IMG/VR virus record: IMGVR_UViG_3300045974_000132 | Coordinates: 124,001 to 188,000 of that record | DNA: 64,000 bases | Strand: one strand, 5' to 3' | Shown: positions 33,206 to 50,595 of the stretch, one piece after another | Position numbering within the stretch: the first letter of the stretch is position 1 | Layout of the letters: each line of letters begins with the position of its first letter | Position numbers and translations under genes: made by a program | The notes under the pieces: generated by a model | What the model was told of the DNA's origin: nothing | Database searches by the model: none | The model's input: the letters and a program-made list of their open reading frames with translations, nothing else

Positions 33206-33590
33206 GCCGCTCACCTATTTTGGTAATAAGGACTCCGTCATTATCAGGAGAGTGAGCGGCTTAACAAACCAAAGTCTGTTAGTGACCCCATCCGTTTAGG
33301 TGCTGTTAGGCAGCCTTCCGGAAAGACGCATCATTCGCGGCAATTACAAGTTTAGCCCGGTTTAACGAGAGTACAATGCTCGGATCGTTCTTTATCAACT
33401 ACTCATGCCCAATCGAAACCAGGTCAGGCCCATCAGGATCGTTCTATGTATCACCCACCCCGGTGACCTCAGCCTTGCGGTAGGACCTTTCGGCACACAG
33501 AACGATTTTGGTGGACCTGGGGAGAATCGAACTCCCGTCTTGAACACTTTTATTTCAAAAGTCTCATAAGCAAAGTTGTTCCGGTAGCTA
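33206..33590 (-). ncRNA. ssrA: circularly permuted (two-piece) tmRNA
   Basis: T-arm and CAGGTCC-ACCA (33509-33540) lie upstream of the 5' strand GGGCCTG (33431); G3-U70 pair; tag ORF (A)ANDASFRKAA* at 33306-33341; outer boundaries approximate. Confidence 0.9.
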
Positions 33591-33646
33591 ATCGGCTTTA
33601 CTTACATACGATCATATTCCTTAACACGCCAATGATTACGTGTTAG

Positions 33647-34455: not shown

Positions 34456-34530
34456 TGGTTGAGGATGACGGGATCGAACCGACGACCCTCTGCTTGCAAG
34501 CAGAGGCTCTCCCAACTGAGCTAATCCCCA
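34456..34530 (-). tRNA. atypical tRNA-Ala(UGC), possibly pseudo
   Basis: U1-A72, G3-U70, ACCA; palindromic anticodon arm with a 6-nt loop TTGCAA. Confidence 0.75.
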
Positions 34531-36562: not shown

Positions 36563-37238
36563 AATAGAAATTGTAATAGACGCGATTACCTAGTATTAGT
36601 CTATTTGCACTTCACTTCACTTCATCCTAGTATGGGTAGTGTTACGTTCTCGCTACCAACGCCTGAAGATCACACTCTACAGGTAGTGTTTTATATACAT
36701 CTACTTCTATTGACTTTCAATAAGTGAAGGTTCTACATTCGCTACACCCTAACGCTCTCGTGTCATAGCCTCCGCGCATTCGGGCAGGCCGTCTGGTTGC
36801 AAGAGTAGGTGGTTAAATACAGAACCTTCACGTATTTAAAGTACATGCTACTTATTTACACTTTTGTTTAAGGGTGCCCAGGCTTGATTAGGGCTCAGCA
36901 ACACACTGGCAGTTGCCTCCGGTGAGTCGTGCGTCCACGTTGCTCACACCATTTCCTATCAATGCCTTCGCAGCACAAGCTAGTGTATTTCCCGCAAAGA
37001 TGAATGGTTAGACCAAGCAGAGCTTTTACCCTATAGACCATGTGAAAGCGTGAACGGGGTTAACGGACTTGTGTTTCATGTTTCTGCATCACATCTAGCG
37101 TGTCCATCCACGCCGACCCTTAAACAAAAGAAGTATATATTGCCACACTCACTAACGGCAGCTATGATTTTCTTGCTTACATTGACGCAGCCTAGGCTTT
37201 TGAGGCATCTGCGGGTCATCAGTGAGTGTGGGAATATA
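36563..37238 (-). ncRNA. array of four stem-closed structured RNA modules downstream of tRNA-Thr(AGU)
   Basis: Closing stems at 36563/36711, 36714/36841, 36861/37130 (15 bp perfect) and 37143/37231 (11 bp perfect); no credible ORF. Confidence 0.6.
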
Positions 37239-37242
37239 AACT

Positions 37243-37318
37243 TGGTGCCCTGTGTCTGAATCGAACAGACGACCTCTCGCTTACTAGGCGAGTGCTGCTA
37301 CCTCTGAGCTAACAGGGC
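37243..37318 (-). tRNA. tRNA-Thr(AGU)
   Basis: GCCCTGT/ACAGGGC acceptor, CTCGC-CTAGTAA-GCGAG anticodon arm, ACCA. Confidence 0.92.
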
Positions 37319-38109
37319 TTTTGTTACTTGAAACTTTTTACAGTTTTACTTTCGACCGTAGTATTTTAGCTTACGCTGGGTAAACCGATAGTTGTACCGA
37401 TAAGCAGAAGCTAGATCCTTCAATAAGAAACTAAACCTACGTTGCACTATACGTTGCTGCGTTCGGACTGTACGAAGTTTGCTCCTGATCGAAGTTGTCG
37501 AACGATTGTAGTACAACCTCTTCGACCAAAACTTACGAACATAAGGAGACCAATATTCACCAGCACGAATTACATAGGTGGCCATTATGTTTTCACCCAT
37601 TGGGCTAAGAGAGGGCCGTTCGTTGAGTTGTCCAAATAACGCTGATACTGAAACAGAAGATTATCCAGCCAGCTATTACGACTTCGCAGGTTTATCTTTT
37701 TCATAAGCCTCTGCATGTCATCACTCTCTGGCGCAAGCTCTAAGAGTTTTGCAATTGCGGGTGCATATCGAGTATAGTCCGTACGCAGCGGCATAGGAAA
37801 CTCGGGCATTTCGTATATGCGATCATCTTGCACTGCCGAAAGAAAAACCTTAGCAGTATGGACGAAGCCGTTGTACACGTTTGCAAAGCACGGGAAGGTA
37901 ACTATGTAGCAGTCAGTGTCAAGCATCTTTCCTGTATGCTTTACCCAAACATTAGCATAACGCAAGGCAGATTCTTGATTACGCAAATTGGACTTCAGAT
38001 GAAAGTCTTTGCAGTTGTGAATACCCATGTCCATAGAACGGACTTGGTAGCCACCTGCTCCCGCAACGAAATAAACAAGAATCATTTTAGCCTACCTTGA
38101 TACAAAAGT

Positions 38110-38145
38110 TGGTGCCCCCGGTCGGAATCGAACTGTTAACTGAGC
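38110..38145 (-). pseudogene. 3' remnant of disrupted resident tRNA (Thr-like)
   Basis: AGCTCAGTT...GTTCGATTCCGACCGGGGGCACCA; acceptor strand complementary to GCCCCCG at 38882-38888. Confidence 0.85.
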
Positions 38146-38154
38146 TTGTGTATA

Positions 38155-38239
38155 TGGTGCTGAGGGCGGGACTCGAACCCGCGTGTCCTTTCGGAGCCGG
38201 ATTACAAATCCGGTGCTGTCGCCACTGAGCCACCTCAGC
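38155..38239 (-). tRNA. tRNA-Thr(UGU) with long variable arm
   Basis: GCTGAGG/CCTCAGC, CCGGA-TTTGTAA-TCCGG, variable arm TCC-GAAA-GGA, ACCA. Confidence 0.9.
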
Positions 38240-38242
38240 AAT

Positions 38243-38839
38243 TTAAACTTTCCTACCTCTAAAATAATCGAATGGGTTTATACCATAAGCTATAGCCCAT
38301 TTACGCACTGCGTTATCACTAACGCCGTAATGCTCACCCACCGCTACCCATGATTGCCTACTTAGGCGTTTCATAAGGTTTGCTTTACTTGGTTTTTTCT
38401 GAGTGCTACCCGCAATGAAACATTCTCGGTGAGAACTCTGACATACCGATCCGCAGTAGCTACTGTTGTCCGTAGGCATTTGACAGACTTTACAGCGGGT
38501 ACATTTTGCAAGAACTTTATCAATACAGCCGTTGTGTCGATACGAATAAATGCGGTGCTCAGAAAAGTACCCAATCGAATCAAGCCACCCATGAAGTTTG
38601 GCATGACTAGCACGGCTAAGAACTAGCAGGTTTGAAGGTGCATTATTTACCTTGTTAAGATCAAGATGGTGTACGTGTTCCGTGCGCTTTAGAGGTCGTC
38701 CTAGCGCCCGCTCTGCCACCAAGATATGCTCATAGACATACCCTTCATAAGCACCTGACTTATCGGCCCGGTCGTGAGTCGGCTGCCAAACTAGCAAGTA
38801 GCCCACATTATTTACGATCCGAACACGGTTGCGTATCAC
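38243..38839 (-). CDS. HNH homing endonuclease with C-terminal HTH
   Basis: YVYEHILVAERALGRPL...VHHLDLNKVNN...NLLVL...H; C-terminal SWVAVGEHYGVSDNAVRKW. Confidence 0.9.
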   Translation of the reverse strand: MIRNRVRIVNNVGYLLVWQPTHDRADKSGAYEGYVYEHILVAERALGRPLKRTEHVHHLDLNKVNNAPSNLLVLSRASHAKLHGWLDSIGYFSEHRIYSYRHNGCIDKVLAKCTRCKVCQMPTDNSSYCGSVCQSSHRECFIAGSTQKKPSKANLMKRLSRQSWVAVGEHYGVSDNAVRKWAIAYGINPFDYFRGRKV

Positions 38840-38877
38840 AGCGTTTCCTCTTCAAAATCAACTGCACGAATCTTCAT

Positions 38878-38888
38878 GCTACGGGGGC
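38878..38888 (-). pseudogene. 5' remnant of disrupted resident tRNA (Thr-like)
   Basis: GCCCCCGTAGC, 25 nt downstream of an AACTGTAAA box. Confidence 0.7.
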
Positions 38889-38925
38889 AAATCGTTGACT
38901 ATATGTATTATTTTTACAGTTTGTA

Positions 38926-39231
38926 TCAGCTTGCCTTCGAGGATTTACTATAGTTATTCAAGGAAGTAAGCATATCATGCCACATACCCGAACCACCGCT
39001 TGTCGCCAGCGCCACGACTACAATCAGTACGTACTCGTTAAGCTTCAGGAATGTAAACTCAGGAGGACTAGCATAACAAAGTAATCCGCCTACAATGCCA
39101 GCGATGATCTGATACACAACACCGGGAACTTCGATCTTGGCTAGATGGACGCGCTTTAGAATATCGGTTACGCGCTCGGCTGCTACGCTTGTAACTGCAA
39201 AGTATGTTATAAGCTGAATAAGATGATCCAT
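38926..39231 (-). CDS. holin-like small membrane protein
   Basis: Three hydrophobic helices; AAERVTDILK. Confidence 0.5.
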   Translation of the reverse strand: MDHLIQLITYFAVTSVAAERVTDILKRVHLAKIEVPGVVYQIIAGIVGGLLCYASPPEFTFLKLNEYVLIVVVALATSGGSGMWHDMLTSLNNYSKSSKAS

Positions 39232-40491
39232 AGTTCCACCTTTAGGGCATATCAAAGAAAGTATCTGACAACCCAATTGCTTTTGCTTTAGCTCTTAGTT
39301 CATCACTAATGCCCGGTTCGAGCGTCCAAAAATCTTCAGGAGACTTAACTACTAGATCAGCCTTAGCAAAGCAAGGTTGTCCATAGATAGCAGTAAGCTG
39401 CTTTTCAGAGCTTACATACAAGGGCTTAGAAAAGAACTTCTTGGCACCACGACGGGTCTTAAACAACAATGAGTTAGGAACGCATGTTGCATCTACCTGC
39501 TCACTTGTGTAATATCGGCCTACGAGCTTAATACGAAGTTTAGGTTTGTATCGTGCATCACCCTTAGTGATACGAATGTTGCTTATAGTGCCTATGCTGC
39601 ATGTGAGGAATTTAGTATCGGCACCTGGTATCATAACGCTATGGTCAATTTCACGAACGTAGATTACACTCATTTGAAGCCTGCATCAAAGAAGGTGTTT
39701 AGCAGCCAGCGTTGAAACCAAGACTTGGCCTGAACTAACTTCCACCCTTCTTGCTGGGCACGCCAGGACGGATGAAACACGCCGGTGTTGCACTCAATCA
39801 CAGCAGATCGTATGTCGGCACCCGAGTGATAAACACAACAAGCTTGATTGTGTTCGACAACGATACCTAGGTCGAGAAACTCAGGCTTGCGAGGTTGTAG
39901 ATTGCCGTAAGCTAGTTTTAAATTGTTAGTCATGACAACCTCTGAACGTTGTATAAAGTATGCCCATCATACTTGTAATAGTAAGGACCATAGTCAGGCA
40001 GAAGAGAGGGCACCCAGATTTTAACAACTGTCTCACCGTCATCATCGGAATACCCAAGTAAAGCTAAAGCTGCTGCCGCTGCTAGATAGTAGTTACCTGT
40101 TTTAACTGAGACCTGTTGTTCAGCACCCTCATTAATCCTAACATGAAAGGTGTTGAGTTTTAGTTTGAGTTTTTCTTCGTCATCATCAGAAGCCATCTTG
40201 AGCCTCACGTTCACGTTTATAGTATGTTAGTACCGCATACTCTTTCGATTACCCGGTAGATTCTTTAAGCCTTCACGCAACTGTTTAGCTCTAAGCTTCG
40301 GCTTCTCAGTAGGCTCAATAACTTCAGATTTAGGCAAATAGAAAGTTTGAATTCGATTGTCACGGTGGTGTGGACAATTGTAGCAACTACCTGTGATAGT
40401 TAGACTCTCGCTTTGCTTAAAGCAAGGTCCTGTGTATGCGCACCCAGTAACAGATATAGGAGAAGAACAAAACATACACTACCTCATGTGT

Positions 40492-50123: not shown

Positions 50124-50595
50124 TTAACATCTATAGCCAGTTAGAGCATTACCGTACTGGTTTGCTTTGAAGTACCTAGAGCGGCATGAGTGGGAGCAGA
50201 ATGCAACCTTAACACGCTTCTTAGAATAAACTTCTCGAACAAACCCAGAACACTTTGCACAATAAAGCTTTACTGGTTTTCCGTAAAGCTGGACTTGCTG
50301 CTTTTTACGATTCTTAGTTCCAGATAGCAACTGAAGATTACGAAACTTATCATTTCTAAAGTTGCCGTCTTTGTGATCTACTTCTTCAGCGGAAGTTAAA
50401 AACCGACCAAGCTTTATTTCCAACTCTAGCATATTGCCTAGCTGTCCGTTTCACGCTATCGTACAGGATAACGATCTTTCGTCCATCTTTTCTTTTATAC
50501 GGGCCGTACACCTTAAACGCATTTCCGTACAAAGCAACAAAGTCAGTGTAAAAAGTTGAGTACGGCTTACACTTTGTTTTAGACTTTGCTGGCAT
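50124..50595 (-). pseudogene. frameshifted HNH homing endonuclease
   Basis: N part GPYKRKDGRK...QYAR (50595) and C part LEIKLGRFL...VDHKDGNFRND...NLQLL are in different frames, shifting near 50425. Confidence 0.8.

What the first reader, a model, noticed from the sequence alone, without database searches (positions are those of the whole stretch)
38110..38888. Thr cassette inserted at the D-arm with an AGC junction repeat and later deletion in the old tRNA
Seen: 5' piece GCCCCCGTAGC, then the insert, then AGCTCAGTT followed almost directly by the T-loop and acceptor. AGC appears at both junctions, and the anticodon arm of the old tRNA is gone. An AACTGTAAA box 25 nt upstream, the putative promoter of the old tRNA, would now drive HNH plus the new tRNA. 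The insertion point differs from the Ile2 case, implying independent origins.
Basis: partly seen in the sequence, partly recalled or inferred. Interest (0 to 1): 0.65.

Follow-up and report, generated by a model that had tools for sequence, protein, structure and literature searches.

The report
Homing nuclease carrying a spare tRNA
A phage tRNA-Thr gene has been split in its anticodon loop (not its D arm) by a mobile HNH nuclease gene that brings its own replacement tRNA-Thr, and a related phage still carries the unbroken gene at the same spot.

Summary
On the minus strand, a 705-nt insert (38852-38148) holds an intact HNH_3 endonuclease ORF and an 85-nt tRNA-Thr(UGU) with a long variable arm. 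It sits between the two halves of a resident tRNA-Thr(UGU): a 5' half of 36 nt (38888-38853) and a 3' half of 38 nt (38147-38110).

A relative, L097, carries the uninterrupted 75-nt tRNA at the same locus behind the same AACTGTAAA box. It shows that GCCCCCGTAGC continues directly into an unusual D arm, so the break lies in the anticodon loop. The AGC "junction repeat" and the "AGCTCAGTT D-arm remnant" are coincidences. There is no large deletion.

The closest HNH homologues (53-56% identity), in four other phage contexts, also travel with a long-arm tRNA-Thr(UGU) inside a split canonical tRNA. More distant family members are ORFs of true group I introns in the anticodon loops of phage tRNA genes. 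The window has no ribozyme; the spare tRNA occupies that position.

Best reading: a ribozyme-less homing element that makes up for the tRNA gene it destroys. Cleavage and homing are inferred, not shown. This is a new variant of a known kind.

The parts
38913..38921 (-). AACTGTAAA box, a promoter-like motif of this phage, 24 nt upstream of the old tRNA
   Evidence: There are 9 copies, all on the minus strand, against 1.1 expected. Eight of the nine are intergenic, 49-125 nt before ORFs or 18-24 nt before tRNAs. The same box precedes the intact tRNA in L097. Promoter function is inferred.
38853..38888 (-). 5' half of the resident (old) tRNA-Thr(UGU): acceptor 5' strand, non-canonical D arm, and the 5' strand of the anticodon stem plus TTTTG
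   Evidence: Window 38889-38861 matches L097 591-619 at 93% (alignment). Nucleotides 29-36 (TGATTTTG) have diverged from L097 and are identical to the left junction of the L005 cassette.
38840..38852 (-). 13-nt leader of the HNH gene with a Shine-Dalgarno-like AAGAGGAAA
   Evidence: Read directly from the sequence.
38243..38839 (-). HNH_3 homing-endonuclease-like ORF, 198 aa, GTG start: N-terminal HNH domain, four-Cys zinc ribbon, C-terminal helix-turn-helix
   Evidence: Pfam PF13392, E 5e-9; phrog_15471, E 2e-27. All columns that are invariant in the 30-sequence family alignment are present. The AF2 model has pLDDT 93. Residues 1-88 align to I-HmuI at Z 5.9, and residues 130-198 form an HTH fold.
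38155..38239 (-). New (cargo) tRNA-Thr(UGU), 85 nt, with a 3-bp variable-arm helix capped by GAAA and an encoded CCA
   Evidence: ARAGORN; Rfam tRNA, 62.4 bits. Six such tRNAs share a cloverleaf of 25 pairs, 16 of them with compensatory changes, including the extra arm.
38148..38154 (-). 7-nt spacer (TATACAC) between the cargo tRNA and the old 3' half
   Evidence: Read directly from the sequence.
38110..38147 (-). 3' half of the old tRNA-Thr(UGU), from A37 to CCA. The T-stem 5' strand has decayed; the T loop, acceptor 3' strand and ACCA are intact.
   Evidence: Window 38133-38109 is 100% identical to L097 643-667. The tRNA profile matches positions 45-76. Length is 38 nt against 39 nt in L097. 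The acceptor pairs 7/7 but the T stem only 2/5.

Best explanation
The element is a mobile HNH endonuclease cassette lodged in the anticodon loop of the phage's resident tRNA-Thr(UGU) gene.

Shown:
- The resident gene is split into a 36-nt 5' half and a 38-nt 3' half by a 705-nt insert.
- The insert consists of a short leader, an intact HNH_3 ORF and a complete second tRNA-Thr(UGU) of a different build (long variable arm).
- A relative has the unbroken gene at the same locus.
- The closest HNH relatives carry the same kind of tRNA inside split tRNAs in four other phage backgrounds.
- The wider HNH family includes ORFs of true group I introns at the same tRNA position.
- Here there is no ribozyme and no room for one.

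Inferred:
- The nuclease cuts or nicks intact canonical tRNA-Thr(UGU) genes of co-infecting relatives near the anticodon-loop coding region.
- Recombinational repair then copies the cassette in, together with a few exon nucleotides on each side.
- The long-arm tRNA differs from the target and so escapes cutting. It supplies the decoding function that the insertion destroys, so the insertion costs little. This is the role that self-splicing plays for the intron-borne relatives.
- Transcription probably starts at the old tRNA's AACTGTAAA-associated promoter.
- RNase P and 3' processing would then release the cargo tRNA 3 nt after the HNH stop codon.
- The old tRNA itself is dead: it has no continuous anticodon loop, and its T stem pairs 2/5.
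For: - Empty-site allele. L097 592-666 is an intact 75-nt tRNA-Thr(tgt) behind the same box and upstream of the orthologous 166-aa gene. The window matches its nt 1-28 and 52-76 on either side of the insert.
- Cassette recurrence. HNH homologues P0002, P0004 and P0005 (53-56% identity) in L005, L008 and L009/L010 are each followed by an 86-87-nt tRNA-Thr(tgt) and bracketed by tRNA halves. L100 has the order tRNA then HNH.
- The acceptor strands of the old halves pair 6-7/7 in all five cases, each with an ACCA tail.
- The four HNHs form a clade with SH-aLRT 97.
- The family is tied to the tRNA anticodon loop. Nineteen of 45 non-redundant viral full-length members are bracketed by tRNA halves. 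Sixteen of 30 metagenome members have a 5' and/or a 3' half beside them, seven of them both.
- Eleven loci score as Intron_gpI at 56-84 bits, each hit ending at the 3' half.
- No ribozyme in the window. The whole-window Rfam scan and an E<=10 scan of 37900-39100 give no Intron_gpI hit. Only 13 + 3 + 7 nt of the insert are neither ORF nor tRNA.
- The ORF is intact with all family-invariant residues and has an I-HmuI-like N-terminal domain.
- The cargo tRNA belongs to a conserved class with covariation. That class also occurs without an HNH, in Sinorhizobium phage Phosso.
- Divergence from L097 is concentrated next to the junctions (nt 29-36 and 40-52). Nucleotides 1-28 are 26/28 identical to L097 and nt 53-76 are identical. 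The left junction 8-mer equals that of L005. This pattern fits co-conversion of exon flanks.
Against: - No cleavage, homing or expression data exist. The target site is unknown.
- The closest relative (L095/L096, 86% identity in the flanking protein) has neither state. It carries a long-arm tRNA-Thr(UGU) alone at this locus, with no HNH and no halves. The order of events is therefore not resolved.
- The HNH tree does not nest the Thr-cargo clade inside the intron-borne clade. Descent from an intron is not shown.
- In the neighbouring CAT cassette, the old halves show three compensatory pair changes between the window and L095. Broken tRNA halves may therefore keep some selected role, which the simple 'dead relic' view does not predict.
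- Only one sequence carries this exact Thr insertion.
Confidence: 0.7

Rival explanations
1. The cassette entered the D arm after GCCCCCGTAGC, with a 3-nt AGC duplication. The old tRNA then lost its anticodon arm by a later deletion, leaving AGCTCAGTT next to the T loop.
For: The strings exist as described, and AGCTCAGTT looks like a canonical D arm.
Against: - The intact orthologue in L097 continues GCCCCCGTAGC with ATGAAGGCTCGTGCAGT, just as the window does with ATGAAGATTCGTGCAGT. The D arm therefore lies upstream of the HNH gene and is non-canonical.
- The 3' piece is 38 nt, against 39 nt in L097 from position 37, so nothing large is missing.
- All related cassettes and introns break in the anticodon loop.
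Confidence: 0.02
2. The interrupted tRNA is still used. Either its halves are joined after RNase P and 3' processing remove the cargo tRNA (for example by a phage RNA ligase), or the acceptor/T-arm 'top half' formed across the insert serves as a processing or stabilising signal for the HNH-tRNA transcript.
For: - The old acceptor strands stay complementary 6-7/7 in five Thr cassettes, and the T stems pair 5/5 in four of them, while the D and anticodon parts erode.
- In the CAT cassette, three stem pairs changed on both sides and stayed paired between the window and L095, with a rough P of about 1e-4.
Against: - In this window the T stem of the old Thr tRNA pairs only 2/5.
- The junction-proximal nucleotides are scrambled.
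- The old CAT tRNA has A at position 33, and its anticodon stem pairs 3/5.
- Related Thr cassettes have lost different inner parts.
- The compensatory changes could predate separate invasions.
Confidence: 0.12
3. No homing is involved. The arrangement arose by illegitimate or tRNA-tRNA recombination within a tRNA array, and the HNH gene is a passive or decaying passenger.
For: - Phage tRNA arrays are recombination-prone.
- Many family members sit free between tRNAs without any halves.
- L095 has the long-arm tRNA without an HNH.
Against: - The same three-part unit recurs inside split tRNAs in five unrelated backgrounds.
- The ORF is intact with all invariant residues.
- The break sits where intron-borne relatives sit.
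- There is a presence/absence polymorphism at one locus.
Confidence: 0.08
4. It is still a self-splicing group I intron, too divergent for Rfam to detect, with the tRNA embedded in a peripheral loop.
For: The HNH family is intron-borne in many relatives. L009 and L005 keep a P1/P2-like hairpin after the 5' half.
Against: - No Intron_gpI hit even at E<=10.
- Only about 23 nt of the insert lie outside the ORF and the tRNA.
- The exons cannot re-form a tRNA, because the T stem pairs 2/5.
Confidence: 0.02

Closest known systems
[quoted passage not shown]
   Same: Insertion in the anticodon loop of a tRNA gene, and an endonuclease ORF inside the insert. The window's HNH belongs to a family whose other members are ORFs of Rfam-scoring group I introns at that position in phage tRNA genes.
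   Different: There is no ribozyme here and the exons cannot be rejoined; a whole second tRNA stands where the ribozyme core would be. The cyanobacterial intron endonuclease is not an HNH_3 protein (own knowledge). The 2014 review also states that all phage introns known then were in protein-coding genes.
Phage T4 SegB, a free-standing GIY-YIG homing endonuclease in the tRNA cluster (PMC2330249; PMC13096335)
   Same: A phage homing nuclease associated with tRNA genes. It cuts tRNA genes of relatives that lack it and is inherited together with neighbouring tRNA genes by co-conversion.
   Different: SegB is GIY-YIG, lies between genes, and recognises the T-loop motif of many tRNAs. The window's element is HNH_3, lies inside one tRNA gene, and carries a same-anticodon substitute.
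I-HmuI (PDB 1U3E), the intron-encoded HNH nicking endonuclease of Bacillus phage SPO1
   Same: Best structural match for the N-terminal 88 residues (Z 5.9, 77 residues aligned, rmsd 3.8). The layout is also the same: an HNH module followed by a C-terminal helix-turn-helix DNA-binding module.
   Different: No sequence-level match to any PDB chain. There is an extra four-Cys zinc ribbon. The I-HmuI intron is in a DNA polymerase gene (own knowledge).
[quoted passage not shown]
   Same: Phage endonuclease ORFs located among tRNA genes.
   Different: PMC2330249 reports only that their ORFs lie in the tRNA gene cluster. A split tRNA with an internal substitute tRNA has not been described for them as far as I could find.

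Membership tests
HNH_3 homing endonuclease gene (mobile, I-HmuI-like) | HNH catalytic motif and an intact ORF | tested here: met
   PF13392, E 5e-9. All family-invariant residues are present (H57, H58, N66, N70, H79, H83, and the ribbon cysteines C119, C129, C133; C116 is nearly invariant in A1, invariant in A4 and present here). N-terminal domain aligns to I-HmuI at Z 5.9.
HNH_3 homing endonuclease gene (mobile, I-HmuI-like) | Presence/absence polymorphism at one locus among relatives, with an empty target allele | tested here: met
   L097 has the intact tRNA at the orthologous site. L095/L096 lack the HNH.
HNH_3 homing endonuclease gene (mobile, I-HmuI-like) | Same element found in unrelated genomic contexts | tested here: met
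   L005, L008, L009/L010 and L100 have different flanking genes and different old tRNAs.
HNH_3 homing endonuclease gene (mobile, I-HmuI-like) | Site-specific cleavage of the empty allele and biased inheritance | not testable with these tools
   Requires enzyme assays and mixed infections.
Group I intron in a tRNA anticodon loop | Insert located in the anticodon loop | tested here: met
   The 5' half ends at about nt 36 and the 3' half starts at A37, relative to L097. tRNA-profile breaks fall at 34-37 in relatives.
Group I intron in a tRNA anticodon loop | Catalytic core (P3-P9) present | tested here: not met
   No Intron_gpI hit at the gathering threshold or at E<=10. Only about 23 nt of the insert lie outside the ORF and the tRNA. 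By contrast, 11 relatives score 56-84 bits.
Group I intron in a tRNA anticodon loop | Exons that re-form a functional tRNA | tested here: not met
   The T stem pairs 2/5, and nt 29-36 and 40-52 have diverged.
   With the true boundaries (38853/38852 and 38148/38147) the two AGC copies are not at the junctions. One lies in the D stem; the other lies at A38 and the first bases of the anticodon stem's 3' strand.
tRNA (cargo, Thr UGU with long variable arm) | Cloverleaf with covariation and a conserved anticodon loop | tested here: met
   ARAGORN and Rfam at 62 bits. Six homologues give 25 pairs, 16 of them compensatory, with an invariant TTGTAA.
tRNA (cargo, Thr UGU with long variable arm) | Charged with threonine and used in translation | not testable with these tools
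   G1-C72, C2-G71, A73 and the UGU anticodon fit the ThrRS identity rules of E. coli (own knowledge). The effect of the extra arm is unknown.

The most novel reading that the evidence does not exclude
This would be a distinct class of mobile element in large phages: an intron-like homing cassette that has given up the ribozyme. It makes its insertion into a tRNA gene harmless by carrying a same-anticodon spare tRNA. The re-built body of that tRNA, with its long variable arm, would also make it immune to the element's own nuclease. The paired 'top half' of the broken tRNA may be retained as an RNA-processing handle. Analogous units seem to exist for Val, Lys, Ile, CAU and Leu(UAA) tRNAs, and they sit beside a previously unreported population of group I introns in phage tRNA genes.
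Probability: 0.35. Interest if true: 0.8.

Novelty: new variant of a known kind. Interest (0 to 1): 0.66.

Why it matters
Homing endonuclease genes usually survive inside essential or useful genes only because an intron or an intein splices them out. This element suggests a third route: bring a replacement copy of the gene you break.

If that is right, several things follow.
- It would explain tRNA fragments and odd long-arm tRNAs (Thr, Asn, Lys, Ile, Met) in tRNA arrays of large phages.
- It would give a mechanism for tRNA gene turnover and spread between phages.
- It would supply natural nucleases that are specific for tRNA gene sequences.

The related finding also matters. [quoted passage not shown] A 2014 review stated that all phage introns known then were in protein-coding genes (PMC3984707).

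Tried and rejected
- Phage GenBank search with 37000-40000. Megablast found nothing. blastn hit only tRNAs.
That reconstruction was wrong.
- The true 5' 24-mer found only the source contig in viral contigs and nothing in metagenome contigs.
- Single-protein locus search. The flank protein and the HNH found only the source contig, IMGVR_UViG_3300045974_000132.
- A script pairing acceptor 7-mers with G-U allowed was too noisy to use.
- Joining halves at many offsets and calling ARAGORN gave offset-dependent anticodons and was not informative.
- MAFFT of the whole cassette against the short alleles aligned the wrong tRNAs. It was replaced by BLAST and pairwise alignment.
- A sigma-70 promoter scan found none in 37900-39300. 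The AACTGTAAA box is therefore not a standard -35/-10 promoter.
- Sequence search of the PDB with the family profile gave no hit. Foldseek gave only a weak I-HmuI match, E 0.15. VIA-align gave Z 5.9.
- The HNH tree could not show whether cassettes descend from introns.
- Literature searches found no description of an HNH plus substitute tRNA inside a split tRNA, nor of group I introns in phage tRNA genes. The library is incomplete, so this is absence of evidence only.

Full report
**Setting.** The window is part of a 286-kb IMG/VR phage contig, IMGVR_UViG_3300045974_000132. Almost all genes lie on the minus strand. The window holds seven tRNAs and a permuted tmRNA.

**Reading of 38960-38060 on the minus strand**, in order:
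- an AACTGTAAA box (38921-38913);
- 24 nt of spacer;
- GCCCCCGTAGC and what follows it;
- a 198-aa ORF with a GTG start (38839-38243), which is an HNH_3 endonuclease (PF13392, E 5e-9; phrog_15471);
- 3 nt;
- an 85-nt tRNA-Thr(UGU) (38239-38155) with a long variable arm;
- a 7-nt spacer;
- a stretch ending in a T loop, CGGGGGC and ACCA (to 38110).

**The decisive comparison.**
- The downstream 166-aa protein (37585-38085) has two relatives in public assemblies, at 86% and 66% identity.
- The 66% relative lies on L097. About 150 nt upstream of that gene, and behind the same AAACTGTAAA box, L097 carries an intact 75-nt tRNA-Thr(tgt) at 592-666 (Rfam 53 bits).
- The L097 tRNA begins GCCCCCGTAGC and goes straight on into ATGAAGGCTCGTGCAGT. 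The window reads GCCCCCGTAGCATGAAGATTCGTGCAGT.
- BLAST gives window 38889-38861 = L097 591-619 (93%) and window 38133-38109 = L097 643-667 (100%).
- The old tRNA therefore has an unusual D arm (GCAT / GAAG.. / GTGC), and that arm lies upstream of the HNH gene.
- The 5' half is 36 nt (38888-38853). The 3' half is 38 nt (38147-38110), against 39 nt in L097 from A37.
- The string AGCTCAGTT is A38, the 3' strand of the anticodon stem and the variable loop. Its likeness to a D arm is accidental.
- The insert is 38852-38148 (705 nt), and it lies in the anticodon loop. There is no AGC duplication at the true junctions and no large deletion.
- The old tRNA is nevertheless dead. It has no continuous anticodon loop, and its T stem pairs only 2/5, although the acceptor still pairs 7/7.

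**Pattern of divergence.**
- Relative to L097, nt 1-28 are 26/28 identical and nt 53-76 are identical. Nucleotides 29-36 and 40-52, which flank the insert, are heavily changed.
- The eight nucleotides at the left junction (TGATTTTG) are identical to the left junction of the related cassette in L005.
- This is the pattern that co-conversion of exon flanks during homing would leave. It is suggestive, not proof.

**The cassette recurs.**
- The HNH protein has hundreds of homologues.
- The closest three (53-56% identity) lie on contigs with unrelated neighbours. Each is followed within a few nucleotides by an 86-87-nt tRNA-Thr(tgt). Each is bracketed by a 5' and a 3' piece of a canonical tRNA.
- A fifth case, L100 (44% identity), has the order old 5' piece, long-arm tRNA-Thr, HNH, old 3' piece.
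- In all five cases the old acceptor strands are complementary (6-7 of 7) and end in ACCA.
- How much of the inner part survives differs between cases. L005 keeps both complete halves (tRNA-profile positions 4-34 and 35-76). L008, L009, L100 and the window have lost or scrambled different junction-proximal parts.
- In a maximum-likelihood tree of 45 family members, the four HNHs with a downstream Thr cargo form a clade (SH-aLRT 97). Its sister is an HNH from L012 that sits with a tRNA-Val inside another split tRNA.

**The wider family points to tRNA introns.**
- I built a tRNA profile from 114 tRNAs of the fetched loci and an HNH profile from alignment A1. With them, 19 of 45 non-redundant full-length viral members are bracketed by tRNA halves. 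The break falls at profile positions about 35/36.
- In metagenome contigs, 16 of 30 members have at least one half beside them, and seven have both.
- Typically the 5' half lies 40-100 nt before the ORF and the 3' half lies 80-165 nt after it.
- In eleven loci that downstream space scores as Rfam Intron_gpI (56-84 bits, gathering score 50). Each hit ends exactly at the 3' half. L101 shows the same layout by eye. Most of these introns interrupt tRNA(CAU) right after the anticodon.
- So this HNH family is largely the ORF of group I introns in phage tRNA genes.
- The window and L005/L008/L009 give no Intron_gpI hit. For the window this holds even at E<=10. Only about 23 nt of the window's insert are neither ORF nor tRNA.
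- The distance from the ORF stop to the 3' half (83-122 nt) is similar to that in the intron-bearing loci, but here it is filled by the tRNA.
- L009 and L005 keep a hairpin after the 5' half that resembles the first hairpin of the introns.
- The tree places the intron-borne HNHs in a different clade from the Thr-cargo clade. Whether the cassette descends from an intron, or the two are parallel uses of one nuclease family, is open.

**The cargo tRNA.**
- Six long-arm tRNA-Thr(UGU) genes were compared: the window, L005, L008, L009, L095 and Sinorhizobium phage Phosso.
- They fold into one cloverleaf with 25 pairs, 16 of which show compensatory double changes. These include a 3-bp extra-arm helix capped by a GNRA-like loop. 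The anticodon loop is invariant.
- This is a real, conserved tRNA class.
- It also occurs without any HNH, in the cultured 469-kb phage Phosso and in L095.
- G1-C72, C2-G71, A73 and the UGU anticodon fit threonine identity as known from E. coli (own knowledge). Charging is untested.

**A third allele.**
- The window's closest relative (L095/L096) is syntenic over about 15 kb at 65-97% nucleotide identity.
- At this locus it has a long-arm tRNA-Thr(UGU) alone, preceded by an unrelated 61-aa ORF. It has no HNH and no halves.
- Homology to the window resumes inside the T loop of that tRNA, opposite the window's old 3' half. Its acceptor (GCCCCGT/ACGGGGC) resembles the old one.
- It could be a collapsed cassette, a converted resident gene, or an older state. 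I cannot tell which.

**The promoter claim.**
- AACTGTAAA occurs nine times, always on the coding strand, against 1.1 expected.
- Eight copies are intergenic. They lie 49-125 nt before ORFs, or 18 and 24 nt before tRNA-Thr(AGU) and the old tRNA-Thr.
- The box also precedes the intact tRNA in L097 and a gene in L095.
- It is not a sigma-70 consensus.
- That it now drives the HNH gene and the new tRNA is plausible but inferred.

**Independence of the three cassettes.**
- The HNHs next to tRNA(CAT) (45993-45403) and tRNA-Leu(UAA) (50432-50124, frameshifted) share only the 40-residue HNH_3 core with the Thr HNH. They belong to other PHROGs.
The CAT cassette also splits its old tRNA in the anticodon region (tRNA-profile positions 3-28 and 36-76).

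**An unexplained observation that tempers the 'dead relic' view.**
- The CAT cassette is shared with L095 at 78% identity, similar to the flanking genes.
- Its old halves differ at 14 of 78 nt. Three stem pairs (1-72, 3-70, 52-62) changed on both sides and stayed paired, keeping the acceptor at 7/7 and the T stem at 5/5 in both lineages. A rough estimate gives P of about 1e-4.
- The anticodon stem of that old tRNA pairs only 3/5 and position 33 is A, so it is not a working tRNA.
- Either each lineage was invaded separately after the tRNA had diverged, or the acceptor/T-arm top half is still under selection, for example as a processing signal.

**Comparison with what is known.**
[quoted passage not shown] The same review states that all phage introns known by 2014 were in protein-coding genes, despite the many phage tRNA genes (PMC3984707).
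- T4 SegB is a free-standing GIY-YIG nuclease in the tRNA cluster. It cuts tRNA genes of relatives and carries neighbouring tRNA genes along (PMC2330249). Its association with tRNAs is widespread (PMC13096335).
- I found no report of a nuclease gene plus a same-anticodon substitute tRNA nested inside the tRNA gene it interrupts.

**Verdict.**
- The best explanation is a ribozyme-less homing cassette with a compensating tRNA (confidence 0.7). Nuclease action and homing are inferred.
- This is a new variant of a known kind, of moderate-to-high interest.

Noticed in passing
window 46065-45275 (minus strand); L095 1785-2694: A second cassette: HNH_3 (45993-45403, phrog_59) plus tRNA(CAT) (45401-45326), inside an old tRNA split in the anticodon region. 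Between the window and L095, the old halves show three compensatory pair changes in the acceptor and T stems, although the old tRNA cannot work. A cassette-borne CTCTGCTCT is complementary to old-tRNA nt 21-29.
   Followed up: partly
window 50629-50019 (minus strand): A third cassette. An old Leu-like 5' piece (GCCCGGGTGGGGAAATTGG...) is followed by an HNH broken by a frameshift (ATG at 50595; second ORF 50432-50124, phrog_14913). Then come tRNA-Leu(UAA) (50123-50039) and a 12-nt acceptor-plus-CCA remnant (50030-50019) that pairs 6/7 with the 5' piece.
   Followed up: partly
loci L015, L019, L020, L029, L030, L032-L034, L037, L038, L041, L101: HNH-encoding group I introns (Rfam Intron_gpI, 56-84 bits) sit in the anticodon loop of phage tRNA genes, mostly tRNA(CAU), on large IMG/VR contigs. 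ORF-less intron hits also occur (L025, L028, L046, L079). A 2014 review said no phage tRNA introns were known.
   Followed up: partly
L022, L026, L027, L036, L042, L043, L046, L050, L051, L066, L091, L133 and the window: Phage tRNA arrays hold many 82-94-nt tRNAs with long variable arms but with Asn, Lys, Met/Ile2, Ile(UAU), Arg or Thr anticodons. These isotypes normally have short variable loops. Several lie next to HNH genes of this family.
   Followed up: no
window 34456-34530 (minus strand): ARAGORN calls a tRNA with a four-base anticodon (tgca). The orthologue in L095 (11351-11426, 92% identity across the region) is a normal tRNA-Ala(tgc). The window copy may have an altered anticodon loop.
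   Followed up: no
window 33215-33601 (minus strand): A phage-encoded permuted (two-piece) tmRNA (Rfam tmRNA_permuted, 89 bits; tag AANDASFRKAA). Relatives L095 and L009 also carry permuted tmRNAs.
   Followed up: no
L095 7890-7974 and L096 1745-1829: At the orthologous locus, the closest relative has a long-arm tRNA-Thr(UGU) alone. Its acceptor and T loop resemble the window's old tRNA. How this allele relates to the cassette is unclear.
   Followed up: partly
L095 9045-9823 versus window 37318-37135: L095 has a 222-aa HNH_3/HTH gene directly after tRNA-Thr(AGU) that the window lacks. L095 10628-11240 holds another HNH (PF01844) between two tRNA halves. Both are further presence/absence polymorphisms of nuclease genes in this tRNA region.
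   Followed up: no
L097 151-307: A 95-nt tRNA-Ser(tga) is followed by an orphan 3' fragment of another tRNA-Ser. That fragment matches the window's tRNA-Ser (40539-40491) at 86%. It looks like a tRNA replacement scar without any nuclease gene.
   Followed up: no
L095 4294-4374: A Rfam Twister-sister ribozyme hit just above threshold (37.9 bits against a gathering score of 34). No such hit appeared in the window at the gathering threshold.
   Followed up: no
window 38879-38855 (minus strand): The old D-arm hairpin followed by AGTTGATTTT was flagged as terminator-like, just upstream of the HNH start. It might limit HNH expression.
   Followed up: no
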